Shown here in pieces: positions 6,982 through 35,537 of a stretch of 64,000 nucleotides of DNA; positions within the stretch are counted from its first letter, which is position 1, and every line of letters starts with the position of its first letter. Source of the DNA: Obrimoposthia wandeli (lineage: Eukaryota); NCBI GenBank assembly GCA_977020255.1, contig CDROCS010000410.1, positions 248,001 through 312,000 of the forward strand. Direction: 5' to 3'. Made by a program: the position numbers and the translations under genes. The notes under the pieces are model-generated. The model did not search any database and had not been told where the DNA came from. It worked only from the letters and a program-made list of their open reading frames with translations.

Positions 6982-6997
6982 CTGTATACTTAAACAG
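6982..6997. promoter_or_regulatory. LexA (SOS) box upstream of the VOC gene
   Basis: CTGTATACTTAAACAG = CTG-N10-CAG with TATA-rich core, 26 bp before the ATG at 7024. Confidence 0.7.
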
Positions 6998-25200: not shown

Positions 25201-26425
25201 TCTCACCCGGATACACAGAGACCGTATCATCAAAAACACGATCGGTTGTCATGCCACTGTTATCAAGTGCCGATATCGAATTGAGACCAATAGATTCGAC
25301 TTTACTTGTCCATGTTGCATATGGATTACCGCTAATATCAGAATGATTGTATGAACTGGTGTTTAAATCATTACCTAAATCAGTGACTAACTGGGCAATA
25401 TTGTGTTGAACTTTATAATCTTTAACGATGCCTTCACCGTTATTTTTGACACTAAGATTAATAATCATTTGGCCATTAACTAAGTATGCATTACTGCTAT
25501 TAAGGGCATGCAATGTTATATCTAGTTCACCGAGTGCAGGGGGTGTCGTTAATTCATTACTATTAACATCAGTAGGTTCTTTCGTCGATGACGTTGCAGA
25601 GGTAACAATATCCCCCAATAGCTTGTCAGAGACTTTGGTCGTCATTGTATAGGTAACACTACCGCCTACGGCTAAAGCAACACCCGTGGCCACTAAATCA
25701 CCAGAAGGTAAAAACGAGCCCGCATCACTCTTTGACCCATTAGTTACCGCGCTAATAGCGACACTAGAGAAAGCAGGGATATTTGAGCCGTCAATAGACA
25801 TAGCCATTAATGCATTCAAAGGCTGGTTAATTGAAAGGTTTTGAACTCTAGCTGTGCCCGTATTTGTCGCTTTAAGCGTATAAACCAGTTGGTTTTTAAC
25901 CGTGTATTCTGTTTTGTTTACCGATAAATCAAGCGTGTATTGATAAGTCGCAGGCGTTACGGTTACTAATGTCGAATCTATCGTCTCATTTACCGTCGTT
26001 ACAGTAGCGTTAACCGATATATTTTTTTGAGCATCATTCGAGGTTAATGCTGTAATGGTATAAGTTAACACTCCCCCACTTCTTAGACTTGCAGCATTTA
26101 CATCTAAATCGCCCGATGTTGCATAGCTACCTTGATCAGATAAGAAAGTGGATATTCCTGAAATATCAGTGGATAAAAAGGCATTATGTACACCTGATTT
26201 TACCGACATAAAATCTGCATATATAGATATATCATTCACAGTATTACTACTAATGTTTGTTACTTTAACTAAATAGGTTAGAGGTTCATTATTTTCGTAT
26301 ACCGCTTTACTCGCAACAACGTCAATCGTCAAATCTGCAGCAAGTGCAACAGAGCTTGAGAAAAAAGTAAAACATACAAAAAAACACCGGAAAGCGGTGT
26401 TAAATAACAACGAAAATAGCTTCAT
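16292..26425 (-). CDS. Giant (3377 aa) DUF11 repeat surface protein / putative adhesin with a C-terminal SdrD-B-like module
   Basis: Signal peptide (VALA-A); about 21 diverged Ig-like repeats L.v.K...Y.PG..ltY.i.v.N; C-terminal IIGKVFEDHNGDG ... GIPGVRL...G.VIETDEYGRYHVP. Confidence 0.88.
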   Translation of the reverse strand: MKLFSLLFNTAFRCFFVCFTFFSSSVALAADLTIDVVASKAVYENNEPLTYLVKVTNISSNTVNDISIYADFMSVKSGVHNAFLSTDISGISTFLSDQGSYATSGDLDVNAASLRSGGVLTYTITALTSNDAQKNISVNATVTTVNETIDSTLVTVTPATYQYTLDLSVNKTEYTVKNQLVYTLKATNTGTARVQNLSINQPLNALMAMSIDGSNIPAFSSVAISAVTNGSKSDAGSFLPSGDLVATGVALAVGGSVTYTMTTKVSDKLLGDIVTSATSSTKEPTDVNSNELTTPPALGELDITLHALNSSNAYLVNGQMIINLSVKNNGEGIVKDYKVQHNIAQLVTDLGNDLNTSSYNHSDISGNPYATWTSKVESIGLNSISALDNSGMTTDRVFDDTVSVYPGESINYVITATLTPVTIGNVKNITATVLKDDGTLADPNNIISGEVAAQYVLSTDDPEIKITKTTSDREYTPGVSPGNEVLYDISVENTSDKYFANNLVIVDKLTCIKTEQTGGAGSGNAFTSWVLNVVNGSDDQGTDAGSFNYGSTQTGDLTISPDIAPGQKVNYQLRATVSDTSIGNILDDDLMCNDDITESGTGINMPDGNLSVSKDVDQYYYSSGQTLTYTIKVTNKTSGYAEQVPVVDDLASIMVTDIYGKSIPAYTSWEITASAEKIEGGEATDTMTGITTPIQYPTTLDVKASIQPKTIVTYTVKAQVTPTANGEIQNTVTVQGNVVADRSSIPKAFYVTVEKLAKVGDSSSFSRLQAAYSKPDNQVTYQLIVKNDPHNGFATDVNVVDDIAAIQADMLEPDNTPVTVFTGWTISASKSVVDGSGLTTAQQTAIIDATDVGLYNDNESIDLTAQIPPNIEIIYTVVATIDRSDTNKIIWGKFNNVATVTTASNGRTVSDNVLIVPKEPDVFVTKLSSNEYFEIGKEVTFEIFVFNNGNGFANNVDVSDDIEALNVFNPGWTITAKIDDHAKSGSYPDVKSTWPEGGNIGSEIDIDPKESSGDFSGMGYVSYTITGIIKDDYAKQEISNTVVTYDPSLGTTSSSTAEVGIDKFATRFNVSIIKTSDKVRAIPGEDLTYSITLRNASKTVTANNLTVADLISGIRAVLANDKDDQIENYADQSPFEYWSVKLPGENDFGPETNDNFIYPAVGSTDKLTLAPEETKTFEIKARIKDNFVGSDNGTSGLNDLLKNDAYVYRDFGEVTEVSHVAHHENKRASPGAHTTRKLYVNGVETQFYSPGDTLTYTVNVSSTSGYLNDHSIYEDLEGLKVELMDGSQGNPFSDVFTVNVEKEDSDGGAGTTDGTLDGVVKDNNDINTTIDVAGGDSVLYTVEGIARYDAVGDISIGGIIVRPNEQHLNFSKVVDELNYEPGETLTYQLIIENDGKGNAYNIPVSDEISQIQVELIDGTTGPAFMPGWTIAPQVTGGDLSANAQVGSVVDGQDINTLASIPTNATITYVVTTVVNPKAVGDIVNVLTVDGDRVSTLSKPNTQKFEFEKEILAYYDTDGTTNLSSGLAGYKPDGFIEYQIEIKNDNNVHLNDITIVDELSKVNTQCYNLTSGLTETCSAFDSWTIQTNVDNSGLTHAGTVTNNQDIDTTFNLAATGAVALPTFIRYTIKAHIRENAVGDFINTARIDGSHKASSARSIMLPAQISKTHKAYTDTSFSTVKTNYNHQTDNQKVVYHLRIENKGEGLEYGKSLVERFSQIEARLAQTNLTQGDLNYDSIYQPSGWTVTATTSGEPTTLINGFISANNIDIDLPFVSIAPGGWIDFVMESQIRERTLDPVVIMPKYGTTNLQKSTISPDASALNVNKEIVSIAGKPYVLGDYYKPGDTVEYQFTVANTTSVWNDNTVIQDLISNVKVEVIGGTSESALINTHISNVVTTGIDADVDTKTLHYAADDDVDIDIDIQASDGLDIGPGEAITFTISGEIRPDALGIINGNKGTGGTQSVTTDNIPPASPVLEFEKTVTNSTADSNVCSFPSNTGDGCEYNPAGQVTYQISVSNSGEGIANDVAIKDLLSTINTSDGVNAFSFNSVHVIEQPINERFSITGNYEGKGDLNANFDLMPTDTVIFEVTGVVATSATGTITNTASINNVPSNPVILGAGTASIISRKHSDITSYVPGQTINYTIAILNKSDTNTEVSVVDPISTFLVETADGSLQPALTSWSIASRVVSDGDHDSSPSYTDISSLPTSGDIDSVIKMAARHTDSTATLVEIVITGKIRDDAIGKITNVVTINDNDYRVDEGYIVPEKGSLTVTKSASKMPATYLPGEVIGFDIAVENVGAGYATNVTIADIAENIQTDFAAQARLGKAFEQWDLTTISASGSLSKPIVGSEITGSEGYSIDYHIAPGETVNLHVEGTVNNKALGDITNEVIVTDEDKNKLFAQATYTPEKAALTVTKVVDKPEYEAGDTLTYTIEITNTTAAWAKDVKVTDLFSTIQSTTIAGADVTAFMPDSIAMTGSSLTTNSVIPVVSGDDINGYMEIAPNDVITITASGQLLTNLHGEVKNTVSVELDGIESSAEAISVPVIPAVTLTKEAPVAVYVPGETSDFVITVTNETNAFADDVKLEDIISGLTVETVDGNTEAAFEFWNVAVKSSDPDTEITNSPTNINEDISVNIDLAPLSTVTFTVSGEVNKKAVGIISNEAKMLFNALTINAQAEIIPEEQNVSFIKTLANGVQQGTYDTGGQSEFHITLTNEASSFAQDIHIKDLINELMVMNVVGQETTAFSTWDINYKVSNDKYNTTSVTQVTPLSSGDIDVIVDLAPSAAIEFIVKGIIDPLALGEIVNTATMDNGITTIDSSALLRPYDIVLVVKKTADKADYGNDDEQVTFTLAVTNRGSSDALNVLLADEISALKGSNGNPLFTDWKTTINEVTKSGSTLIETQQSIDLHSTQTLKAYEGNAFLITVVGQIGKGLDDDITNTFTVTAPTSSKTSGDIFAQDSVTIHVKKFSDNEGQLQVTKQAMKDSIQVGDVVEYEVIIENHNESEFKSVHLEDRYPSGFQYVENSTEITNSGPDGIFDSADDVFNNQEPSIANVLLFPVGDMLAYGGSESTIQESVRVRYLLRATVGATFGQYVNTAYAKTPAEGMTTGTLEIKSNMSSATVEITPDKLFDTASIIGKVFEDHNGDGYQADATAFDIKVTADLGKIAYISGTTTLYMNGKEESVNSLNNGIEIDHLFGLSRNRTLPEGNKVIIQFEARNSNSFDFTVKTSDGSNIAFSRNDIINIHNTGNKKQSLSAEHLKVTRNLYKDGDHYLWEIEIENMGLYEDGIPGVRLLTVEGIVIETDEYGRYHVPDQWVLNKKGKQFLVKVDTDSLPTNMRVISENPKVRRISPNQLTKFNFSVNSKNNSEKQELGSY

Positions 26426-26803
26426 TTAATCAATCATCCAAATAACATACAAAAATAGCTGCCATAAAAATAGTACGACAGAAAGCATATACATACATAT
26501 GTATATGCGCATATTCATATGCATGATAATACTCTTTATATATTAATAACGAAACATTAGATCAATAATACCTATCAACAATTTACATTCAGTACTATTT
26601 ATCTACAATCACACCTTGTTATTTGACATAATACTTAAGTTAATAGCATAAACAGTTTAAGTGACATGGTAGAGGAAATTCAAAATATCTTCACGGTTAC
26701 AGCGCTGTGTAACGAATTTTGGGGGGGGCCACGAAGTCGCTTTAAATATGAGGTGGTTTAAACTCGTGATCATTTCAACTACACTAGCGGAGTAAAATTG
26801 TCC

Positions 26804-26869
26804 GCTATAATTTGTGAGGAACGAACAATAGCCAACGGTTTTTTGTCCTTGTTTAATATCTTGTTATGT
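26804..26869 (-). mobile_element. attC9, truncated (right arm missing)
   Basis: ACATAACAAGATATTAAACAAGGACAAAAAACCGTTGG... same family as attC4/attC8, breaks after AATTATAGC. Confidence 0.8.
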
Positions 26870-27463
26870 ACGTTTTATCGCGACGATGGAAAACGTATGC
26901 CAGTGCTTTGTCTTTCCAATTGCTGTTTTACCAATTTCATCGCGTTCATGAAAGCGTATTATTTCAAAATTGTTAAATAAAGCTTCAACTTCAAATTTAC
27001 TCATTGGAGTTGTAGGAGAACGAAAACCAGAAGCCCAGCTATCATTTACCCCCATAAAGTCCCCTGCAAAGACGCCTCCTTGCTGAATACTGTCAATGAT
27101 ACGTTTCCAGGTTATTATAAACAGAACAGGATCTGCAAAATACAAACTAGAGTTTGCTATTACAACTCCGCATTTCGGATATTCAAAAGTCTCAAAGCTT
27201 GATTCTCGGATTGTTACTAATGGTTCATCACCGAAACGCTCTACACAAATAGCAATTGAATCAGGATTGTTGTCAAAACTTTCAACCTCATAACCAAGGC
27301 GTGAAATATATGAAGTATCACAACCAGTTCCGCAACCGACATCGATCGCGACTTTAACATTTGAATCGTTTAGTTTTATCGCGAACTCTGTTCTTGGATC
27401 ATGACTTTTAGCTAAAGATTTTTCGTAATATTGACGCCAAATCTTATCATCAGTTTTAGACAT
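26864..27463 (-). CDS. Cassette 9: class I SAM-dependent methyltransferase (true start likely 27463, MSKTDD)
   Basis: AIDVGCGTG motif I; AAGGTG SD; the longer ORF start runs through attC8. Confidence 0.85.
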   Translation of the reverse strand: MSKTDDKIWRQYYEKSLAKSHDPRTEFAIKLNDSNVKVAIDVGCGTGCDTSYISRLGYEVESFDNNPDSIAICVERFGDEPLVTIRESSFETFEYPKCGVVIANSSLYFADPVLFIITWKRIIDSIQQGGVFAGDFMGVNDSWASGFRSPTTPMSKFEVEALFNNFEIIRFHERDEIGKTAIGKTKHWHTFSIVAIKRT

Positions 27464-27485
27464 AATTAATGAAACACCTTGAAGT

Positions 27486-27576
27486 ACATAACGCCCAAAT
27501 AACAGGCTAAGTAATAGTTGGCTCAAATTGTATAGCGAAGCGAAACTACGTATCCTTGTTTAATATCTTGTTAGGA
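27486..27576 (-). mobile_element. attC8 (91 bp, intact)
   Basis: TCCTAACAAGATATTAAACAAGG ... CCTGTTATTTGGGCGTTATGT. Confidence 0.9.
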
Positions 27577-27954
27577 ATACTTTTCGCCAAAGCTCTCGTA
27601 ACACTTTGGAAAGTAGCCCCAAATTCTGATTATTGAATCCGTTTTTTCGAACTCAAATCCAATGCTATTAACAAGACTTAAGACATTATCGGTTAATTCA
27701 ATATCAATCCACTCAACGCAAAGTAGTGGGAATGGTAAGTGATAATACCATTCGCGATCCCAACGTGAGATGTAACCGTTAACTACCTTAGTTCGATAGT
27801 AAGGTTGATATTGAAGTTCACGAATCTCGGAAATTAATTCATTCCATTTTGTATTGTTGGCGGCACCAACCAATTGCTTTTTAACCATAATCCTTTTAGC
27901 TTCCTTCACGTCCTTTTCATCGGACACTGCATCAGCCATTGGCAGAAGACTCAT
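27571..27954 (-). CDS. Cassette 8: uncharacterised protein (DUF6678-like)
   Basis: ANNTKWNEL, W..EW.YH.PFP...VEW.D, IRIWGY; family recalled from motif only. Confidence 0.6.
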   Translation of the reverse strand: MSLLPMADAVSDEKDVKEAKRIMVKKQLVGAANNTKWNELISEIRELQYQPYYRTKVVNGYISRWDREWYYHLPFPLLCVEWIDIELTDNVLSLVNSIGFEFEKTDSIIRIWGYFPKCYESFGEKYS

Positions 27955-27960
27955 ATGTAT

Positions 27961-28060
27961 ACCTAACGCTGCATTAAGTGGATTAAAATAGTGGGTTACA
28001 ATGTGTAGAGAATAAAATACTAAAGCACTGTTTAAACTAGATTTAAAGCTATTTTCATGT
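27961..28060 (-). mobile_element. attC7, left arm heavily eroded (R'' = ACATGAA), right arm intact
   Basis: Right arm CACTATTTTAATCCACTTAATGCAGCGTTAGGT is canonical; left arm only partly complementary. Confidence 0.75.
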
Positions 28061-28062
28061 TT

Positions 28063-28353
28063 TTACTCTTGCTTTAAAAACTCTAGCTCCAGTGATGTTT
28101 TACTAGGAACGAATTCAGTAATTTCATAGTTAGCTAAACCATGAATTTTAAATGGGTCATCAGATAAAATTAGATCTAAAACCTCTAGGCTTTCAGCCTT
28201 AGCTAAGATAACACCACCAGTGCGAGGTACTTTTCTGCCAGAAGCTAAAAAAACACCATTTGAATATTGTTTGTTCAAGTAATCAATATGACTACTTAAA
28301 TGCTTTTCAACTTCACTCATCTCGCAAATATATGTAAGAGAAATAATGAACAT
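28063..28353 (-). CDS. Cassette 7: YciI family protein
   Basis: H..YL......G.FLASG.K.PRTGGVILA, DPF...GLA.YEITEF. Confidence 0.88.
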   Translation of the reverse strand: MFIISLTYICEMSEVEKHLSSHIDYLNKQYSNGVFLASGRKVPRTGGVILAKAESLEVLDLILSDDPFKIHGLANYEITEFVPSKTSLELEFLKQE

Positions 28354-28425
28354 ATTTCACCTCCTTTTTCTCAATTTGAATTGATAAATAATTTCAATTT
28401 GCTTTGATAGAAACTACCAACTAAA

Positions 28426-28532
28426 ACATAGCGCCACCATAACACGTGCTGAACGACATAATTACCAAGCCAAATTACTCTAAACCACAAACGCCGAGTG
28501 TAATAAGCATCGTGTGGATGGCTTTGTTATAA
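28426..28532 (-). mobile_element. attC6 (107 bp, VCR-like) with mutated core GCTATGT instead of GTTATGT
   Basis: TTATAACAAAGCCATCCACACGATG ... CACGTGTTATGGTGGC-GCTATGT; same family as attC1. Confidence 0.85.
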
Positions 28533-29063
28533 CGCAGTTCTCAATTTAGGCCAATGATCTAACCAACCTTTCGACGTTACACGGTCACTGAAGATTTCCA
28601 AAGAACGCTTAGGATTATGTGTAACCTGCAAATTAAACAACGATTCAAAACCAAATGCAGAAATACATTCGTACTTACCATTGTCTAATTTTCGTATTGC
28701 GACCGCCGTTTCTTTTTCTGGCCAATAACTCATTGCGTCGATGATACTTAGATACGGTTTATCACCATTTCTTTTGTGCATCATTGCTTGATTACGCACT
28801 TCCCAGTTCAATTCTGGCATCAACGCAGAAAGCTGAGATTCGATTAGTTTGTAGCTTTCAGGGGTAGATTCCGTGTCATCGAAATAAATAACGTCAACGT
28901 CATTCAAAGCCGTTGATACTGGTTTCTGATGCAAATGATCCCACACCAAGTTTCGGACGAAACCAGCGGCTAAATAACAATAAGATAAATTGAGCTGCCG
29001 AACACAATCAAGAGCCTTAACTCTCAATTCATCTTTCTCAATTAATGTGATGATTCTATCCAT
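28527..29063 (-). CDS. Cassette 6: nucleotidyltransferase family protein (DUF925)
   Basis: LAAGFVRNLVWD.LH, NDVDVIYFD, WEVRNQA.MH.RN.D.PY....DAM.YWPE..TAVA. Confidence 0.88.
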   Translation of the reverse strand: MDRIITLIEKDELRVKALDCVRQLNLSYCYLAAGFVRNLVWDHLHQKPVSTALNDVDVIYFDDTESTPESYKLIESQLSALMPELNWEVRNQAMMHKRNGDKPYLSIIDAMSYWPEKETAVAIRKLDNGKYECISAFGFESLFNLQVTHNPKRSLEIFSDRVTSKGWLDHWPKLRTAL

Positions 29064-29070
29064 ACCCACC

Positions 29071-29085
29071 CTGCATTATGTTTTA
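29071..29085 (-). mobile_element. attC5 deletion scar (cassettes 5 and 6 fused)
   Basis: TAAAACATAA (end expected for cassette 5) joined to ATAATGCAG (start expected for cassette 6, GTTATAACGCAG) through shared ATAA. Confidence 0.75.
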
Positions 29086-29730
29086 CCAACATAGTTCATA
29101 CGAACCGTTTTTGTTTTCAATTGCCAGTTCTGAAAAGCTATTAACAATTAAATCAGCTAAAGCTAATTCAGATTCTTTATGACTAGTTAATATGGCGACA
29201 GTAAAACACCCTGCTTCTTTAGCTGATTTGATACCTGCGGGCGAATCTTCAAAGGCAACACAGCTCATCGCGTTCAAACCTAATTTTTCAGCTGCAAGCG
29301 CAAATGGTTCTGGATGTGGCTTACCAAAGCGAACATCTTCAGCACATATCATGGTCTCAGGTAACTTGAACCCAGATGCACGTAAACTTGTCTCAGCAAC
29401 TTTTCTTGGACCACTCGTTGCTATTGCCCACGAACTCTTAGGTATGTTTTCTACAAAACTTAATGCTCCATCAATTTCAGTAGCTGATTCCATTGCTTTT
29501 ATTGCGATTCTTTTAACTACATTTTCTTCATGCACATTTGCATATTTAGAACCGACTAATTCTAAAGTTTCGCAAATTTTTCTGCCGTGAACGTGTGGAT
29601 ATACAATTGAAAACTCAACTCCATTTTGCCCAGCCCACTCTTTCCAAATATTATTTATAACCAGTGTAGTGTTTACAAGAGTTGCATCTACATCAAATAT
29701 AAAACCATTACATGAATGTTTATTTATCAA
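29083..29730 (-). CDS. Cassette 5: HAD-IA family sugar-phosphatase-like hydrolase
   Basis: FDVDATLVNT (motif I variant), ATSG, GKPHPEPF, FEDSPAGI. Confidence 0.9.
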   Translation of the reverse strand: MINKHSCNGFIFDVDATLVNTTLVINNIWKEWAGQNGVEFSIVYPHVHGRKICETLELVGSKYANVHEENVVKRIAIKAMESATEIDGALSFVENIPKSSWAIATSGPRKVAETSLRASGFKLPETMICAEDVRFGKPHPEPFALAAEKLGLNAMSCVAFEDSPAGIKSAKEAGCFTVAILTSHKESELALADLIVNSFSELAIENKNGSYELCW

Positions 29731-29770
29731 ATCTATTCCTTAAATGTGCAACTACGAAAATGGCAATAAA

Positions 29771-29868
29771 ACATAACGCCCTGTTAATAGGCAAAAAAAG
29801 TTGGTTAAAATTAGCGACGAAGGAGCAAAACCAACTGTTTTTTGTCCTTGTTTAACAGCTTGTTATGT
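29771..29868 (-). mobile_element. attC4 (98 bp, intact)
   Basis: ACATAACAAGCTGTTAAACAAGG ... CCTATTAACAGGGCGTTATGT. Confidence 0.9.
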
Positions 29869-30393
29869 TTTGGTAACTTCACTATAAAAACGGTCAAGAC
29901 CTTCACTCAACATAGAGTGGCAATCATTGTCTTGACTAATATCTCCGTCGAGTAACACACTACCTAATAATGGTATTGAAACATAAGCAACATCAATGAT
30001 AATTCCCGACATGGTAGTTAACACCTCCTTTAATGACTCTAATGCATGAGTAGCTCGTGGGGATGTATTGATTAACATAATGGGAATTTCAGGAAACTCA
30101 GAACTACTTACTAACCAATCTAACACGTTTTTCATTGGTGCACTGATGCCGTGCGCATACTCTGGGCTTGATATAATTAAACCCGAAGACGATTTAATTT
30201 CAGATTTTATTTTATCGAGTGCTGGAATAAATTCAGATTCTAAGTCAGGGTTAAACAAAGGTAACTGGCTAATGTCACCAATTACAATATCAATATGGTC
30301 AGGTGAGTTTTGTGCTAAAGCCTTCAAAGCGGCTGAATTGTATGATGCTTCTCGAAGGCTCCCTGATAATGCGAAAAATTTAATTCTATCCAT
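29863..30393 (-). CDS. Cassette 4: NADPH-dependent FMN reductase (true start likely 30393, MDRIKF)
   Basis: ALSGSLREASYNS, SPEYAHG...PMKN.LDWL; ORF extension to 30516 crosses attC3. Confidence 0.9.
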   Translation of the reverse strand: MDRIKFFALSGSLREASYNSAALKALAQNSPDHIDIVIGDISQLPLFNPDLESEFIPALDKIKSEIKSSSGLIISSPEYAHGISAPMKNVLDWLVSSSEFPEIPIMLINTSPRATHALESLKEVLTTMSGIIIDVAYVSIPLLGSVLLDGDISQDNDCHSMLSEGLDRFYSEVTKT

Positions 30394-30416
30394 AGAGCAC
30401 CAATACCATGAGAAAA

Positions 30417-30464
30417 ACATAACGCCAAGCTTGCTGCGTCCAAAGCTTGAGCGCCTTGTTAAAT
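30417..30464 (-). mobile_element. attC3, abnormally short (48 bp), probably internally deleted
   Basis: ATTTAACAAGGCGCTCAAGCTTTGGACGCAGCAAGCTTGGCGTTATGT; L' arm incomplete. Confidence 0.75.
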
Positions 30465-30469
30465 TGCTA

Positions 30470-30814
30470 CTACGCAGCACTTGCGCCACACCCTTCAAAT
30501 TCACAACCAGCGTCATGGCCTATCTGTATAAGGTAATCTACCCATTTCAGTAGTTGTTCTTCTGACCAAGTGATGGGGCCTGAGCTTCCAGAAATTATGA
30601 AGGACTTTTTAAAAAAGCCTTCGCTACTAACTTTAAGAGAATAATCGGTTAGCTCAGATTGCAAAGCTGCAACGGCTGCCTTAGCTTTAGTGCTGAAATG
30701 AAAATCGAAATCCAATGGGGACTCTTCGGTTACACCATGCTCTAAAAGCTGCTTCCATACCTCAGCAGTCCTAACCAGATGTCCCATTCTATAATCTTCG
30801 AATTCATTACTCAT
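30470..30814 (-). CDS. Cassette 3: RraB-like domain protein
   Basis: L.EHGV.....L.FDFHF ... G...GCEFEG.GA; AAGGA SD. Confidence 0.6.
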   Translation of the reverse strand: MSNEFEDYRMGHLVRTAEVWKQLLEHGVTEESPLDFDFHFSTKAKAAVAALQSELTDYSLKVSSEGFFKKSFIISGSSGPITWSEEQLLKWVDYLIQIGHDAGCEFEGCGASAA

Positions 30815-30830
30815 TCGCTGGTTCCTTGCA

Positions 30831-30890
30831 ATTTAACGCCTAAAGCATGGGCGCGGGCTTTTTCGCGTCCCATGCCTTTAATTGTTAGGT
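30831..30890 (-). mobile_element. attC2 (60 bp, intact, short 59-be type)
   Basis: ACCTAACAATTAAAGGCATGGGACGCGAAAAAGCCCGCGCCCATGCTTTAGGCGTTAAAT. Confidence 0.9.
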
Positions 30891-31301
30891 AGAGACTGCC
30901 TCTTCTACCCGATTATTTTCCAATTTACTACGGACCAAATCTGATAATTTCAAATAACGGTCAGCTCCATTCTTTGGTGGTCTATTCGGTCTTTCAAATG
31001 ACGAAGGTTCTTGTAACTCTTCAGTATCCCAGAATTGATCGCCAGTTGAATCGAATGACGTACCACCTGGTAACTCGTTTGAGTAATGAACGCCAACTTG
31101 CTCTTCACCCACAAACACCTTCCATAGAACCAGTTTTCCACCAAAATAGTCATTAATTATGAGCGATGACATTCCGCATTGCCCACGGCTCGGGTTGGAT
31201 GGATTCCAATTTTCTGGCTCATCGGTGCTTTCTACGGACCAGCTATCCTGAAGAGCTTTTAATACTTCATCTAGACTTGGATTCATACGTACTACTTGCA
31301 T
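30885..31301 (-). CDS. Cassette 2: YunG-like protein with a putative Cys-His-Asp triad
   Basis: AL..SWS.ES....W...NPSRGQC...SL...D.FGG ... VHY.N ... FDST..QF. Confidence 0.65.
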   Translation of the reverse strand: MQVVRMNPSLDEVLKALQDSWSVESTDEPENWNPSNPSRGQCGMSSLIINDYFGGKLVLWKVFVGEEQVGVHYSNELPGGTSFDSTGDQFWDTEELQEPSSFERPNRPPKNGADRYLKLSDLVRSKLENNRVEEAVST

Positions 31302-31311
31302 TTCCTTAGCT

Positions 31312-31438
31312 ACCTAACGCCTGCATAACACGTTTGCTACTATACAGACTTACTCGAATTTTAACGCCTTAATCACTGAAACTAAAGACAAACTGACAAC
31401 GCCGAGTGTAGCAAATCGTGTTGATGCATTTGTTATAC
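31312..31438 (-). mobile_element. attC1 (127 bp, intact, VCR-like)
   Basis: GTATAACAAATGCATCAACACGATTTGCTAC ... GTAGCAAACGTGTTATGCAGGCGTTAGGT. Confidence 0.92.
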
Positions 31439-31984
31439 CGTAAGACTTTCTGAGTACATTTTTCGGTATGAACGATGCTCTAAGTCCATAGAACTCAGGC
31501 CAAACTTACTTGCTAAAACAATCAGTTCAGACCGATAACTTTCAAGTAGACTTTCATCGTCAGTCATAATCGCAAATTCAGCAAAATCACCTAACCCATT
31601 AAGATTATCGACAGTAATATGAAATTTACCAACAAAGTAAATACTACGCGTTTTCTTCATGGCTAAAACAACATGGTAGCCCATTGTATTAAGCATACTT
31701 TTCGCTTTATTGGCATCGGTGATATTCGTTGCTTCACAACGGTCAGCCTCTGGTCCTTTGACTATCCAAAGTTTAATTCCAGACGGTTCCATTTCACGAA
31801 TACAAAGGCTTTTATTTTCAGCCAAAAGTACTTGTTCAGGAGTATCAAAGTAACAATCAGATTCTAAGTTATCTTCAAGCATTACTTCGTACATCATTGA
31901 ATTTAATATAGTTAAAAACTGAAATTTAGACTTCAGCCTATATTTCAACTCTACTTCAAACTTACCTTCAAAATGTTCTGACAT
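31433..31984 (-). CDS. Cassette 1: CYTH / class IV adenylate cyclase family protein
   Basis: EVELKY (ExExK), D.YFD, LCIR, K.R..Y......ITVD....LG.FAE. Confidence 0.88.
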   Translation of the reverse strand: MSEHFEGKFEVELKYRLKSKFQFLTILNSMMYEVMLEDNLESDCYFDTPEQVLLAENKSLCIREMEPSGIKLWIVKGPEADRCEATNITDANKAKSMLNTMGYHVVLAMKKTRSIYFVGKFHITVDNLNGLGDFAEFAIMTDDESLLESYRSELIVLASKFGLSSMDLEHRSYRKMYSESLTV

Positions 31985-32065
31985 CGAATCACTACTTACT
32001 TAAAATGATAAAGAAGACTAGATTAGCACGCCAATTCACGGATTTCAGTTAACTACGTTCGATTA

Positions 32066-32095
32066 CGGTATAACATTTGTATAGTAGGACGTCTC
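32066..32095 (-). mobile_element. attI site; crossover G^TT between 32074 and 32073
   Basis: Minus strand CCTACTATACAAAT-G^TTATACCG; TTATACCG is the exact complement of cassette 1's inverse core CGGTATAAC; no palindrome upstream; resembles attI L-spacer-R (CTAAAACAAAGTT). Confidence 0.8.
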
Positions 32096-32254
32096 GATCT
32101 CCCAAATCCGTTCACCACTACAAAGTACAATCAATCGACTGAAAACTAAGACTATACTTCAAATAGCGTAAATACTTCTTTTTGGGAAAACGAGCCATCC
32201 TGTAAATTAATTTTTGAGTCTTGTTAATTAAAATAAAAACTCGCTATGTGCCTG

Positions 32255-32283
32255 AGTATATTAACTTAAATTTTTAATAACAA
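32255..32283 (-). promoter_or_regulatory. Candidate cassette promoter Pc
   Basis: Minus strand TTGTTA-N17-TATACT pointing toward attI. Confidence 0.4.
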
Positions 32284-32341
32284 GCTAAACAAGACTGTTT
32301 TCTGACAAACCGTGATTGCAATTATAAGAATATGAATAACA

Positions 32342-32357
32342 CTGTATATAACATCAG
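32342..32357. promoter_or_regulatory. LexA box in the intI promoter
   Basis: CTGTATATAACATCAG = CTG-N10-CAG, 18 bp upstream of the intI ATG; SOS control of integron integrases is established. Confidence 0.9.
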
Positions 32358-32375
32358 TTAAATGGAGTTATGTAT

Positions 32376-32450
32376 ATGTCAGCAAGTCCGTTCATTGAAT
32401 CGATCAGATCTGAGATGCGTTTAAGGGGTTATAGTATACGCACAGAAAAG
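32376..32450 (+). pseudogene. intI: Integron integrase 5' remnant, 25 codons: MSASPFIESIRSEMRLRGYSIRTEK; reads on into unrelated sequence and stops at 32504
   Basis: Typical IntI N-terminus (SPF...R..R.R.YS.RTE); GGAG SD; LexA box; divergent from attI and cassettes. Confidence 0.88.
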
Positions 32451-32578
32451 GCCTGTTACTCTAGGAGTAACAGGCCTTATGAAGTTAACCTAGTTCAGTA
32501 CTGACGTACTAGCCTAATTACTCTTCAGTAGCTTCTTCAGCACTGTCTTCAACATCAATTGCGTTCTCATCGATTACA
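32446..32578 (-). repeat. Diverged second copy of the gyrA 3' tail plus terminator (IDENAIDVEDSAEEATEE*)
   Basis: Aligns with 32732-32950: terminator stem, intergenic segment, AEEATEE* and IDENAI codons; about 24 codons shorter than the active tail. Confidence 0.92.
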
Positions 32579-32596
32579 GTACATATTAACCTTCGG

Positions 32597-32692
32597 TTAC
32601 ATAGTACCGCTTGCCACTTTGTAGTAGACCCCAGCAAAAAGTCCTGCGAATACCAAAACCGTTAATAAGATCTTTATCCAAATATATTTCAT
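32597..32692 (-). CDS. 31-aa single-TM small protein MKYIWIKILLTVLVFAGLFAGVYYKVASGTM (absent from ORF track)
   Basis: AGGTGG SD upstream; clean N-in hydrophobic helix; fills the space between the two gyrA tails. Confidence 0.55.
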   Translation of the reverse strand: MKYIWIKILLTVLVFAGLFAGVYYKVASGTM

Positions 32693-32730
32693 AATTTTCA
32701 AATCCCACCTAAAGAGTAAATATTAAAAAT

Positions 32731-32765
32731 AAAAAAGGCCTGTCACTCTAGGAGTAACAGGCCTT
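32731..32765 (-). terminator. gyrA rho-independent terminator
   Basis: Minus strand AAGGCCTGTTACTC-CTA-GAGTGACAGGCCTT followed by TTTT. Confidence 0.9.
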
Positions 32766-32807
32766 ATGAAGTTAATCTAGTTTAGTACATCGCTGCACTA
32801 CCCTTAA

Positions 32808-35537
32808 TTACTCTTCTGTAGCTTCTTCAGCATCATCTGCAACATCAGTTGGTGCTGCATCCGTTGTTGTAGCTGGAACTTCTGTTGCTGTTTCAGCATT
32901 TTCTGCATCTTCAACAACAATTGCGTTCTCATCAATTTCAACTTCATCGATACGTTGTAAACCAACAACTAGCTCATCTTCACCAGTACGGATTAGACGA
33001 ACACCTTGCGTGTTACGACCAACAGTAGATACTTCAGAAGCACGTGTTCTAACTAACGTGCCACCATTAGTAATAAGCATAATCTCATCACCGTCAAGTA
33101 CCTGCGTTGCGCCAACAACTTTACCGTTACGTTCACTCACTTTAATTGACACAACACCCTTAGTACCGCGACTCTTCGCTGGGTATTCTGCAAGTTCAGT
33201 TCGTTTACCGTAACCGTTTTCAGTTGCCGTTAAGATAGCACCATCGTTCTTCGGTACAATCAGTGACACAACTTTTTGGCCTTCGTCAAGTTTGATACCA
33301 CGAACACCAGTCGCTGTACGACCCATAGGACGTACACCTTTAAACTTAATCTCAGGCTTACCGTTTTCATCTAGAACCGGGTTACCTTCTTCATCAAGTA
33401 CAGGTGTTTCTTCAAACTCGCAGAAACGTACTACTTTACCTTCATCCGAGAACAACATAATGTCGTTAGTACCATCAGTAATATCAACACCGATTAGTTC
33501 ATTCCCTTCATTCAGGTTAACAGCAATGATACCGCCAGCACGAGGCTTGCTATATGCACTTAATGCTGTTTTCTTCACTGTACCATTCGCCGTTGCCATG
33601 AAGACAAATTTGTCATCTTCAAACTCAGACACAGGTAGGATCGCAGTAATACGCTCACCTTCTTCCAGTGGTAGTAAGTTAACAATTGGCTTACCACGGG
33701 CTTGACGACTAGCTAACGGTAATTGATATACCTTCATCCAGTACAAGCGACCACGGCTTGAGAAGCAAAGAATATGATCATGTGTATTAGCAACTAGCAG
33801 ACGTTCGATGAAATCTTCTTCTTTCATCTTCGTCGCTGATTTACCTTTACCACCACGACGCTGTGCTTCGTAATCAGTAAGAGGCTGATACTTAACATAA
33901 CCTTCGTGAGAAAGTGTCACTACAACATCTTCACGTTCGATTAAGTCTTCTAAGTTAATATCAGCACTGCTTGCAGAAATCTCTGTACGACGATCGTCAC
34001 CAAATGCATCTTTTGAAGCTTGTAGCTCTTCAGTGATCACTTCTAGTAAACGCGCAGGCGTATTCAAGATGTATAGTAATTCTGCAATAGCCTCGAGTAA
34101 TTCTTTGTATTCGTTAAGAATTTTCTCGTGTTCTAGACCTGTTAGTTTGTGTAAACGTAAGTCAAGGATTGCTTGAGCTTGAATTTCAGTTAAGAAATAC
34201 GAACCTTCACGAATACCGAACTCAGCTTCTAACCATTCAGGTCGAGCAGCATCATCACCAGCACGTTCTAACATTGCAGCTACATCACCTAACTGCCAGC
34301 CGCGGCTGATCAAGGCTTGTTTTGCTTCTGCAGATGTAGGCGATTGCTTAATTAAGGCAATGATTTCATCAATATTTGCTAGTGCAATCGCTAACGACTC
34401 AAGGATATGAGCACGTTCACGCGCTTTACGCAGTTCAAATACAGTACGACGTGTAACAACTTCACGACGATGACGTAAGAACGCATCTAGCATTTCTTTT
34501 AACGTGAAAATCTTTGGTTGTTTGTCGATCAATGCAACCATGTTTATACCAAACACAATTTGCATACGTGTTTGCGCATAAAGGTTGTTTAATACAACTT
34601 CACCAACAGCATCACGTTTAACTTCAACAACCATACGCATACCATCTTTATCAGATTCGTCGCGTAAAGCACTAATGCCTTCAATTTTCTTATCTTTCAC
34701 AAACTCAGCAATACTTTCAATCAAGCGTGCTTTGTTTACTTGGTACGGTAGTTCGTGAACAACGATGGTTTCTCTACCACGTTCGTTGACTTCAATATCT
34801 GCGCGAGCACGGATATGAATTCGACCACGACCAGTACGGTAAGCTTGCTCGATGCCTGCTTTACCATTAATGATACCGTTTGTTGGGAAATCTGGGCCTG
34901 GAATGTATTCCATTAATTCTTCAAGACTTAGGTCTGGATTTTGAATTAATGCTAAACAACCATTAATCACCTCGTTCAAATTGTGAGGAGGGATATTTGT
35001 TGCCATACCTACGGCAATACCTGACGAACCATTAACCAAAAGGTTAGGAATTCGTGTTGGCATAACTTCCGGAATGAATTCAGTACCATCATAGTTAGGT
35101 ACAAAATCAACCGTTTCCTTGTCTAAATCAGCAAGTAATTCATGCGCAATTTTTGACATTCTGATTTCTGTATAACGCATTGCGGCTGCAGAATCACCGT
35201 CAACAGAACCGAAGTTACCTTGACCATCTACCAGCATGTAGCGCAAAGAGAAAGGCTGCGCCATACGTACGATAGTGTCATAAACAGCTGTATCACCATG
35301 TGGGTGATATTTACCGATTACATCACCAACAACACGTGCTGATTTTTTATATGGTTTATTCCAATCATTCTTCAATTCGTTCATTGCGAATAAAACGCGG
35401 CGGTGAACTGGCTTTAGGCCATCGCGAACATCAGGAAGAGCACGACCTACGATAACGCTCATAGCGTAATCTAAATAAGAATTTTTTAATTCTTCTTCAA
35501 TATTGATAGGTGTGATTTCTGTGGCTAAATTACTCAT
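32808..35537 (-). CDS. gyrA: DNA gyrase subunit A
   Basis: [26 protein letters not shown] (catalytic Tyr), GyrA-box QRRGGKG, beta-pinwheel CTD, acidic tail. Confidence 0.99.

What the first reader, a model, noticed from the sequence alone, without database searches (positions are those of the whole stretch)
26804..32450. Hidden sedentary integron, frozen by loss of its integrase
Seen: attI, LexA box, candidate Pc and nine cassettes whose start and end cores are complementary (CGGTATAAC/GTTATACCG; CTACCTAAC/GTTAGGTAG; GCAATTTAAC/GTTAAATTGC; AAAACATAAC/GTTATGTTTT; GTACATAAC/GTTATGTAC). Only 25 codons of intI survive, so ORF-based annotation misses the element. It is a snapshot of an integron turning into a CALIN, keeping its promoter region.
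Basis: partly seen in the sequence, partly recalled or inferred. Interest (0 to 1): 0.75.

Follow-up and report, generated by a model that had tools for sequence, protein, structure and literature searches.

The report
Integron remnant lacking its integrase
A Moritella bacterium carries, next to its gyrA gene, a gene-capture array (integron) whose recombinase gene has been deleted down to 25 codons. This is a real but familiar kind of decay that has happened repeatedly in this genus, and the array is not truly frozen.

Summary
Window 26773-32450 is a chromosomal integron on the minus strand. It has nine full-length small genes and eight attC-like sites, one crossover site at 32073/32074, a LexA-like box and a 25-27-codon intI stub.

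The stub is 25/26 identical to the N-terminus of an intact IntI that occupies the same gyrA-adjacent position in a sister Moritella genome. About 880 bp of intI are missing. A covariance model built only from relatives' attC sites hits all eight sites, all on one strand, and nothing else in the 64 kb below E=1.

The interpretation needs correcting. The deletion is old, because a sister species carries the identical junction. That species has a different first cassette, so the array changed after (or around) the loss. The four attI-proximal attC sites still fold canonically. The four distal ones are degenerate, and a ninth was cleanly deleted, which fused two cassettes.

Across 13 Moritella genomes the gyrA-linked intI was disabled independently at least four to five times. 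This parallels the ilvD-linked Xanthomonas integron and fits the CALIN definition, so it is a new member of a known kind.

One lead goes beyond that. The about 285-nt attI region is homologous to a Moritella-specific non-coding repeat (about 10 copies per genome) associated with other cassette arrays.

The parts
26773..26870 (-). attC8, the distal end of the array. It is degenerate: the R''-L'' half is conserved but the L'-R' arm no longer pairs.
   Evidence: R1 hit at 26766-26876, 52.7 bits, E=1.4e-9, with many non-canonical pairs. There is no stable ssDNA fold.
26864..27463 (-). Cassette 9 gene: SAM-dependent methyltransferase (TehB/Methyltransf_11-like).
   Evidence: Pfam. The in-cassette ATG is at 27463.
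27486..27576 (-). attC7, degenerate.
   Evidence: R1 hit of 42 bits, E=4e-7. The fold z-score is +1.2.
27571..27954 (-). Cassette 8 gene: DUF6678.
   Evidence: Pfam E=1e-30, model positions 2-122 of 122.
27961..28037 (-). attC6, degenerate.
   Evidence: R1 hit of 31.5 bits, E=1e-4. No fold.
28063..28353 (-). Cassette 7 gene: YCII-related protein.
   Evidence: Pfam.
28426..28534 (-). attC5, degenerate. Its R' core is mutated to GCTATGT.
   Evidence: 81% identical to sites in the G003 array. R1 gives only 14 bits. The fold z-score is -0.7.
28527..29069 (-). Cassette 6 gene: NTP_transf_6 nucleotidyltransferase, fused to cassette 5.
   Evidence: Pfam E=6.5e-58. dN/dS is 0.12 against the G010 homologue.
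29070..29082 (-). Scar where a 121-nt attC has been deleted.
   Evidence: Alignment with G010, which keeps the attC between the same two genes.
29083..29730 (-). Cassette 5 gene: HAD-family hydrolase.
   Evidence: Pfam. dN/dS is 0.11 against G010.
29771..29871 (-). attC4, intact.
   Evidence: R1 hit of 112 bits, E=1.7e-23. The ssDNA fold has z=-5.7, with bulges on the 3' arm.
29863..30393 (-). Cassette 4 gene: NADPH-dependent FMN reductase.
   Evidence: Pfam.
30417..30467 (-). attC3, short and foldable.
   Evidence: Fold z=-2.4. R1 hit of 18.9 bits.
30470..30814 (-). Cassette 3 gene: RraB-like protein.
   Evidence: Pfam E=9e-5, just above the cut-off.
30831..30892 (-). attC2, intact and short.
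   Evidence: Fold z=-3.4 with two bulges on the 3' arm. R1 hit of 29 bits, E=4e-4.
30885..31301 (-). Cassette 2 gene: YunG family.
   Evidence: Pfam E=1e-29.
31312..31440 (-). attC1, intact, 129 nt.
   Evidence: Canonical fold with T and G bulges on the bottom-strand 3' arm, z=-3.1. It is 83-90% identical to sites in the G003 and G009 arrays.
31433..31984 (-). Cassette 1 gene: CYTH-domain protein. Its stop codon lies inside the R'' core.
   Evidence: Pfam and sequence.
32071..32355 (-). attI-type region. The crossover G|TT lies between 32074 and 32073. The region contains the divergent promoter candidates.
   Evidence: Five genomes are identical up to GTTA and then carry different cassettes. 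There is no attC-model hit. The region is 94-96% identical to the region beside the intact intI of G007.
32342..32357 (+). LexA-like box.
   Evidence: It is conserved in G002, G004 and G007, with one change in G009.
32321..32348 (-). Candidate Pc (TATACA, 16-nt spacer, TATAAT), overlapping the LexA-like box.
   Evidence: Consensus scan, 10 of 12. Not tested.
32302..32331 (+). Candidate PintI (CTGACA, 18-nt spacer, AAGAAT).
   Evidence: Consensus scan, 9 of 12. Not tested.
32376..32450 (+). intI stub of 25 codons (27 if counted from the ATG at 32370).
   Evidence: 25/26 identical to the intact G007 IntI. The junction lies in an A-run.
32446..32578 (-). Duplicated copy A of the gyrA terminator plus the last part of the gyrA coding tail.
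   Evidence: Shared with G002 only.
32579..32732 (.). 154-nt spacer between the two terminator copies.
   Evidence: 97% identical in G002. A 46-nt stretch resembles the sequence just downstream of gyrA in G006.
32733..35537 (-). The functional gyrA terminator and gyrA itself, which form the conserved anchor of the locus.

Best explanation
This is the gyrA-linked sedentary chromosomal integron of the genus Moritella, in a lineage that lost the integrase. An about 880-bp deletion between two short A-runs removed intI from codon 26/27 to its stop. The stub became fused to the bidirectional terminator that intI shared with gyrA. No catalytic residue survives, so the locus cannot recombine on its own. 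What remains is the promoter/LexA-box spacer, the crossover site (G|TT at 32074/32073) and nine cassette genes. The genes are kept (all full length; two tested are under purifying selection), while the recombination sites decay from the far end. The four proximal attC sites still have the folded bottom-strand architecture that IntI recognises. The four distal sites have lost pairing or their core, and one was deleted outright. Any further cassette movement would need an integron integrase supplied in trans, or homologous recombination with foreign arrays. Shown here: the identity of the stub, the attC sites and the crossover; the age and recurrence of intI loss; and the conservation of the genes. 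Inferred: the deletion mechanism, transcription of the cassettes from the spacer promoter, and residual trans-mobilisability of cassettes 1-4.
For: The stub is 25/26 identical to an intact IntI (above the TIGR02249 cut-off) at the same position in G007. The window lacks the 882 bp that G007 has between the stub and the terminator. attC model R1, built without any window sequence and with 12 of 28 covarying pairs, finds all eight sites on one strand and nothing else. attC1-4 fold with unpaired spacers and with bulges on the bottom-strand 3' arm. The crossover is confirmed by five genomes that diverge immediately after GTTA into TTATAC, TTATGT, TTAAGT, TTAGGT and TTAAGT cassette starts. intI abuts gyrA in G007, G010, G012 and G003. 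Its remnants abut gyrA in the window, G002, G004 and G009, and G008 and G006 keep an attI-region remnant by gyrA without any intI. All nine ORFs cover their Pfam models. dN/dS is 0.11 and 0.12 for HAD and NTP_transf_6. The four full-length intI genes elsewhere in this 1.35-Gb assembly sit on contigs whose flanking genes are only about 70% identical to Moritella, so they belong to other bacteria. G002, G004 and G009 have no intI anywhere at E<=1e-30.
Against: Pc, PintI and the LexA box are sequence-level candidates only. The rest of this Moritella genome could not be delimited within the mixed assembly, so an intI on an unrecognised contig or plasmid is not strictly excluded. The about 285-nt 'attI' region is homologous to a dispersed repeat, which leaves its nature (classical attI or co-opted cassette end) open. 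R1 scores for attC1, attC3 and attC5 are weak (E=0.1-1.4), because they belong to other attC sequence types.
Confidence: 0.9

Rival explanations
1. The array is not frozen. It is still served in trans: the proximal cassettes (attC1-4 and the 32074 site) continue to be inserted or excised by integron integrases that visit on plasmids or other elements. The locus would then behave as an integrase-less docking platform rather than a fossil.
For: The window and G002 share the identical deletion junction and tail duplication but carry different first cassettes, and the break falls exactly at the G|TT core. The four proximal attC sites keep the canonical folds. The attI region is as well conserved (94-96%) as the neighbouring gyrA.
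Against: The same pattern arises if homologous recombination with a donor carrying another array crossed over inside the conserved attI-gyrA region. No integrase was found in G002, G004 or G009. Distal attC decay and the deleted attC show that at least part of the array has not been recombined for a long time.
Confidence: 0.35
2. The 285-nt spacer is not a classical attI. It is the 3' part of a non-coding cassette-like element that became fused to the intI start, and its terminal site took over as the platform's insertion point.
For: Positions 32071-32355 are 70-76% identical to a repeat found about 10 times per Moritella genome. Every copy ends in the same ...CAAATG|TTA core and is followed by different sequence. 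In other copies the homology continues for another about 140 nt at the point where the window has intI. The copies have no conserved ORF.
Against: The site lacks the R''/L'' partner arm of an attC, and R1 does not hit it. It holds first position in all five type-1 genomes, including the one with an intact intI, which is what an attI does.
Confidence: 0.25
3. The pattern is an assembly chimera or a set of chance palindromes between short genes, and there is no integron.
For: The contig comes from a mixed 1.35-Gb assembly.
Against: The same junction is found in an independent genome (G002). The repeats are homologous to arrays beside intact intI genes. Covariation supports the attC structure.
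Confidence: 0.02

Closest known systems
Xanthomonas ilvD-linked chromosomal integron (Gillings et al. 2005, as summarised in bioRxiv 10.1101/2025.06.18.660453)
   Same: An ancestral platform sits beside one housekeeping gene across a genus. intI has been inactivated many times by stop codons, frameshifts and large deletions, while the arrays are retained. Two divergent intI variants occur at the same locus, with much lower identity than the neighbouring gene. Additional CALINs occur elsewhere in the genome.
   Different: The anchor gene is gyrA, and intI shares gyrA's terminator. In Xanthomonas, strains with the same intI lesion usually have identical arrays. Here the two genomes with the same lesion differ from the first cassette onward, but they are different species rather than strains.
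CALIN (cluster of attC sites lacking an integron-integrase; Cury et al. 2016, PMC4889954)
   Same: There are at least two attC sites and no integrase nearby. The proposed origin, loss of the integrase from a complete integron, fits this locus.
   Different: Only 15 of 279 CALINs had a recognisable intI pseudogene, and that search relied on the C-terminal domain. Here the remnant is a 25-codon N-terminal stub with the attI and promoter region intact, so the origin can be read directly.
Vibrio cholerae superintegron and other SOS-controlled integrons (LexA box at PintI; from my own knowledge: Guerin et al. 2009, Cambray et al. 2011)
   Same: It is a sedentary chromosomal integron. intI and the cassettes are divergent, a LexA-type palindrome lies just upstream of intI, and the attC sites fall into a few homogeneous sequence types.
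   Different: There is no integrase and only eight attC-like sites, against more than 100. LexA binding has not been tested.

Membership tests
Complete integron | An intI gene encoding a tyrosine recombinase with the IntI-specific domain (TIGR02249 / intI_Cterm) | tested here: not met
   Only codons 1-25/27 remain. There is no catalytic domain and no Pfam hit.
Complete integron | An attI recombination site next to intI where cassettes are inserted | tested here: met
   Five genomes share the sequence up to GTTA at 32074-32071 and then carry five different cassettes. The biochemical nature of the site was not tested.
Complete integron | A Pc promoter directing cassette transcription | tested here: inconclusive
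   There is a 10-of-12 consensus match on the cassette strand at 32348-32321. No expression data are available.
Complete integron | Cassettes each ending in an attC with R''/L''-L'/R' boxes, an unpaired central spacer and extrahelical bases on the bottom strand | tested here: met
   attC1-4 meet it. attC5-8 are homologous but degenerate.
CALIN | Two or more attC sites clustered within 4 kb of each other | tested here: met
   Eight sites lie 0.4-1.4 kb apart. Five have E<1e-3 with model R1, which was built from other genomes. IntegronFinder's own model was not available.
CALIN | No integron-integrase gene nearby | tested here: met
   Only the stub is present. The full-length intI genes of the assembly lie on non-Moritella contigs.
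Sedentary chromosomal integron | The same chromosomal location across the species of a clade | tested here: met
   intI, its remnant or an attI-region remnant lies next to gyrA in G002, G003, G004, G006, G007, G008, G009, G010, G012 and the window. In G013 intI lies 50 kb from gyrA.
Sedentary chromosomal integron | A long array (more than 19 attC sites in the Cury et al. definition) | tested here: not met
   The window has eight attC-like sites. In G010, homologues of window cassettes lie up to about 38 kb from its intI, which suggests a much longer array there.
SOS-regulated integron integrase promoter | A LexA box (CTGT-N8-ACAG) overlapping or adjacent to PintI | tested here: inconclusive
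   CTGTATATAACATCAG at 32342-32357 has TCAG in place of ACAG. It matches 17/20 with a Moritella umuD box and is conserved in relatives. Binding was not tested.

The most novel reading that the evidence does not exclude
Moritella genomes carry about ten copies of a genus-specific non-coding module of about 300-430 nt. Its terminal 285 nt are homologous to the attI/promoter region of the gyrA integron, and each copy ends in the same live-looking G|TTA crossover followed by different cassettes. If these copies are attI-type docking sites, usually lying at the upstream end of integrase-less arrays, Moritella would have a 'distributed integron'. In that arrangement many attI-headed arrays would be served by one integrase, or by a visiting one, and loss of intI at gyrA would matter less than it appears.
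Probability: 0.2. Interest if true: 0.65.

Novelty: new member of a known kind. Interest (0 to 1): 0.4.

Why it matters
This locus shows directly how an integron becomes a CALIN, because the attI, the promoter region and a 25-codon intI stub are all still legible. Most CALINs have no recognisable integrase remnant. The genus-wide comparison gives a second system, besides Xanthomonas, in which an ancestral housekeeping-gene-linked integron has repeatedly lost its integrase while keeping its cargo genes under selection. The contrast between a shared lesion and different first cassettes makes one question directly testable in Moritella isolates: whether integrase-less arrays are still remodelled. 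No resistance or virulence function is evident among the cassettes.

Tried and rejected
- **Rfam scan of 26300-32900:** only a chance miRNA-like hit at E=0.9, so no known RNA family explains the repeats or the attI region.
- **R1 on the HAD/NTP_transf junction and the attI region:** no hit. The first is a deleted site and the second is not an attC.
- **An integrase in trans within the same assembly:** four full-length intI genes exist (C253, C5466, C2866, C666). Their flanking genes are only about 70% identical to Moritella, against 90-96% for the window, so I rejected them as belonging to other bacteria.
- **The dispersed element as a strict 'array head':** among the 12 best copies, attC hits lay only on the cassette side. 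In five complete genomes I counted 10 copies with attC hits downstream only, 5 with hits upstream only and 7 with none. The association is a bias, not a rule.
- **A conserved small ORF in that element:** none found.
- **The 40-codon ORF at 32586-32708:** no support for it as a gene.
- **The loose LexA pattern:** not enriched in the window.
Full report
**Context.** The window is G000:C410:248001-312000, a bacterial contig inside a 1.35-Gb, 6912-contig assembly that holds many bacterial genomes. Its GyrA is 95% identical to that of a Moritella MAG and 74-80% identical to those of other marine gammaproteobacteria. At the DNA level gyrA is 89-96% identical to the 12 Moritella species representatives in which it was found.

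**The stub.** An ORF starts at 32370 (MYMSASPF...) or 32376 (MSASPF...) and reads ...YSIRTEK. It then runs into a copy of the gyrA terminator. The first 26 residues are 25/26 identical to the N-terminus of a 320-aa protein in relative G007 that scores 387 bits on TIGR02249, whose cut-off is 265. They are 54-67% identical to the N-termini of the other Moritella IntI proteins.

In G007 the region from attI through the start of intI is 94.7% identical to window 32071-32449, and the gene ends 1 nt before the gyrA terminator. The window therefore lacks about 882 bp. The junction reads ACAGA-AAAGGCC and lies in A-runs present at both ends, which suggests a microhomology deletion. That mechanism is an inference.

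**The array.** Nine minus-strand ORFs lie between 26864 and 31984. Each covers its Pfam model nearly end to end:
- a methyltransferase
- DUF6678
- YCII
- NTP_transf_6
- HAD
- FMN_red
- an RraB-like protein (marginal score)
- YunG
- CYTH

To avoid circularity I built a covariance model from 16 sites taken only from arrays of relatives: G003, G010 and G012, which carry a full-length intI reading frame (G010's has one internal stop), and G004 and G009. RNAalifold gave the canonical attC shape: a 5-bp R box, an unpaired spacer, and an L stem with a bulge. Twelve of its 28 pairs show compensatory changes. With filters off, the model's eight best plus-strand hits in the 64-kb window are the eight inter-ORF sites. 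The scores are 112, 53, 42, 31.5, 29, 19, 18 and 14 bits. All hits lie on one strand, and nothing else in the window has E<1.

As single-stranded DNA, attC1-4 give the expected hairpins. Their z-scores run from -2.4 to -5.7, and the single-base bulges lie on the 3' arm of the bottom strand (T and G in attC1), which fixes the orientation. attC5-8 do not fold better than shuffled sequence, and attC5 has its GTT core mutated to GCT.

Only 13 nt separate HAD from NTP_transf_6. G010 has the same two genes in the same order with a 121-nt attC between them, so that attC was cleanly deleted here. The locus therefore holds nine cassettes, of which four have working-looking sites, four have decayed sites, and one has lost its site.

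HAD and NTP_transf_6 have dN/dS of 0.11 and 0.12 against their G010 homologues. The cargo is maintained while the recombination sites erode.

**The crossover site.** The window, G002, G004, G007 and G009 are collinear from gyrA to ...CTATACAAATG|TTA. They then diverge at once into five different cassettes that begin TTATAC, TTATGT, TTAAGT, TTAGGT and TTAAGT. This is the signature of site-specific recombination at G|TT, between 32074 and 32073.

The site is not an attC. It has no partner arm and no model hit.

**Regulatory candidates.** CTGTATATAACATCAG (32342-32357) lies 12-27 nt upstream of the first ATG. It is invariant in G002, G004 and G007. It matches the perfect palindrome upstream of umuD in G010 at 17 of 20 positions, and none of 100 shuffles gave such a match.

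The consensus scan gives a cassette-directed promoter candidate (TATACA, 16-nt spacer, TATAAT; 32348-32321) and an intI-directed one (CTGACA, 18-nt spacer, AAGAAT; 32302-32331).

**Age and recurrence.** G002 has the identical junction and the identical 287-bp duplication of the terminator plus gyrA tail, at 94% identity over 4.5 kb. The deletion therefore predates the split of two species-level lineages, yet their first cassettes differ.

Other relatives lost intI in different ways:
- **G009:** deleted between two GGTTATA repeats, keeping intI's last codons and a single terminator.
- **G004:** keeps three fragments, aa 1-20, 88-144 and 300-320.
- **G008:** keeps only an about 100-nt piece of the attI region, 23 nt from the terminator.
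- **G006:** has two unrelated genes in place of intI.
- **G010:** carries a second type of intI, 47% identical to the first and also abutting gyrA, with a TGA at about codon 212. It is otherwise 98.8% identical to the intact G012 gene.

Six of 13 genomes score above the IntI cut-off, one of them with that stop codon.

The four full-length intI genes in the present assembly have flanking genes only about 70% identical to Moritella, so they belong to other organisms.

**Comparison with what is known.** This is the pattern described for Xanthomonas. There the platform is ancestral and sits next to ilvD, intI has been inactivated many times, divergent intI variants occur at one locus, and extra CALINs occur elsewhere.

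It also fits the CALIN category of Cury et al. They proposed integrase loss as one origin of CALINs but found pseudogenes near only 15 of 279, using a search based on the C-terminal domain. An N-terminal stub such as this one would escape that search. 'Frozen' and 'snapshot' are not.

**The unexpected item.** Window 32071-32355 is 70-76% identical to a repeat present in all 13 Moritella genomes, in up to about 20 matches per genome, and in about 12 places in this assembly. It was found in only 2 of 288 other genomes sampled from the order.

The copies are 79-100% identical to the reference copy and have no conserved ORF. All end in the same ...CAAATG|TTA core, followed by different sequence with GTTRRRY-like continuations.

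In many copies the conservation extends about 140 nt further, on the side where the window has intI. The 45 nt next to the crossover form the most invariant block.

Among the 12 best copies, attC hits lie only on the cassette side (10 of 12 loci against 0 of 12). Across five complete genomes the tally is 10 downstream-only, 5 upstream-only and 7 with none.

I cannot decide whether these copies are attI-type docking sites, a promoter-bearing non-coding cassette, or the source from which the platform's attI region was built. This is the most novel reading left open.

**Verdict.** It is an integrase-less remnant of a genus-wide gyrA-linked integron, which is a new member of a known kind. The loss is old and has recurred in the genus rather than being caught in the act. 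The distal part of the array is fossilising, but the array as a whole is not demonstrably frozen.

Noticed in passing
window 32071-32355; L103-L114, L122-L126; G000 contigs C1101, C5562, C1957, C5369, C2148 and C410:104185-104375: This is a Moritella-specific non-coding repeat of about 300-430 nt, homologous to the attI/promoter region. It occurs about 10 times per genome, and every copy ends in the same G|TTA core followed by different cassette-like genes. It is often, but not always, at the upstream end of attC clusters.
   Followed up: partly
window 32446-32578 versus 32733-32960: There is a tandem duplication of about 287 bp covering the gyrA terminator and the last part of the gyrA coding tail. 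It is shared only with G002. Copy A is 92-94% identical to the functional tails of G002, G006 and G008, whereas the window's functional tail B is only 75-85% identical to any other Moritella tail. Part of the 154-nt spacer resembles the sequence downstream of gyrA in G006. I found no integrase or element body to support integration of a mobile element.
   Followed up: partly
L091/L101 (G012), L090/L100 (G010), L092/L102 (G003) versus L095/L099 (G007): Two IntI lineages only 47% identical in protein sequence occupy the same position abutting the gyrA terminator in different Moritella species, while gyrA itself is 91-96% identical. This implies replacement of the integrase/attI module at a fixed locus.
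   Followed up: partly
L100 4225-5196 (G010:C1:2014233-2015174): The type-2 intI of G010 carries a single in-frame TGA at about codon 212. It is otherwise 98.8% identical to the intact G012 gene, which suggests a very recent inactivation.
   Followed up: yes
G000 contigs C253:3527248-3528195, C5466:20795-21742, C2866:96936-97898, C666:16418-17356 and C253:3018453-3019194: The host assembly contains at least four more integron integrase genes on non-Moritella bacterial contigs, one of them with an in-frame TAG, plus a fragmented one. Some of the neighbouring attC sites are 78-93% identical to Moritella attC sites.
   Followed up: partly
window 6982-6997: There is a perfect palindromic LexA-type box, CTGTATACTTAAACAG (CTGT-N8-ACAG). 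The gene it precedes was not examined.
   Followed up: no
L104 550-1416 (G007:C19) and L109 1123-1416 (G013): A gene with an integrase-SAM-like N-terminus (MRQLLQQFNEEITLRGYSERTRNSY...) abuts the crossover end of two copies of the repeat. There the core reads CAAC instead of TAAC. It may be a mobile element that targets this site.
   Followed up: no
G004:C88:25039-25914 and G013:C1:1225521-1226396: In G004 and G013 the gyrA match is split, with about 100 extra bases and a 39-nt repeated query segment. This suggests an in-frame insertion or duplication in the GyrA C-terminal domain of these two species.
   Followed up: no
L108 about 1880-1905 (G010:C1, near 1.925 Mb): A umuDC operon with a perfect LexA box lies directly upstream of one copy of the repeat and its attC cluster.
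   Followed up: no
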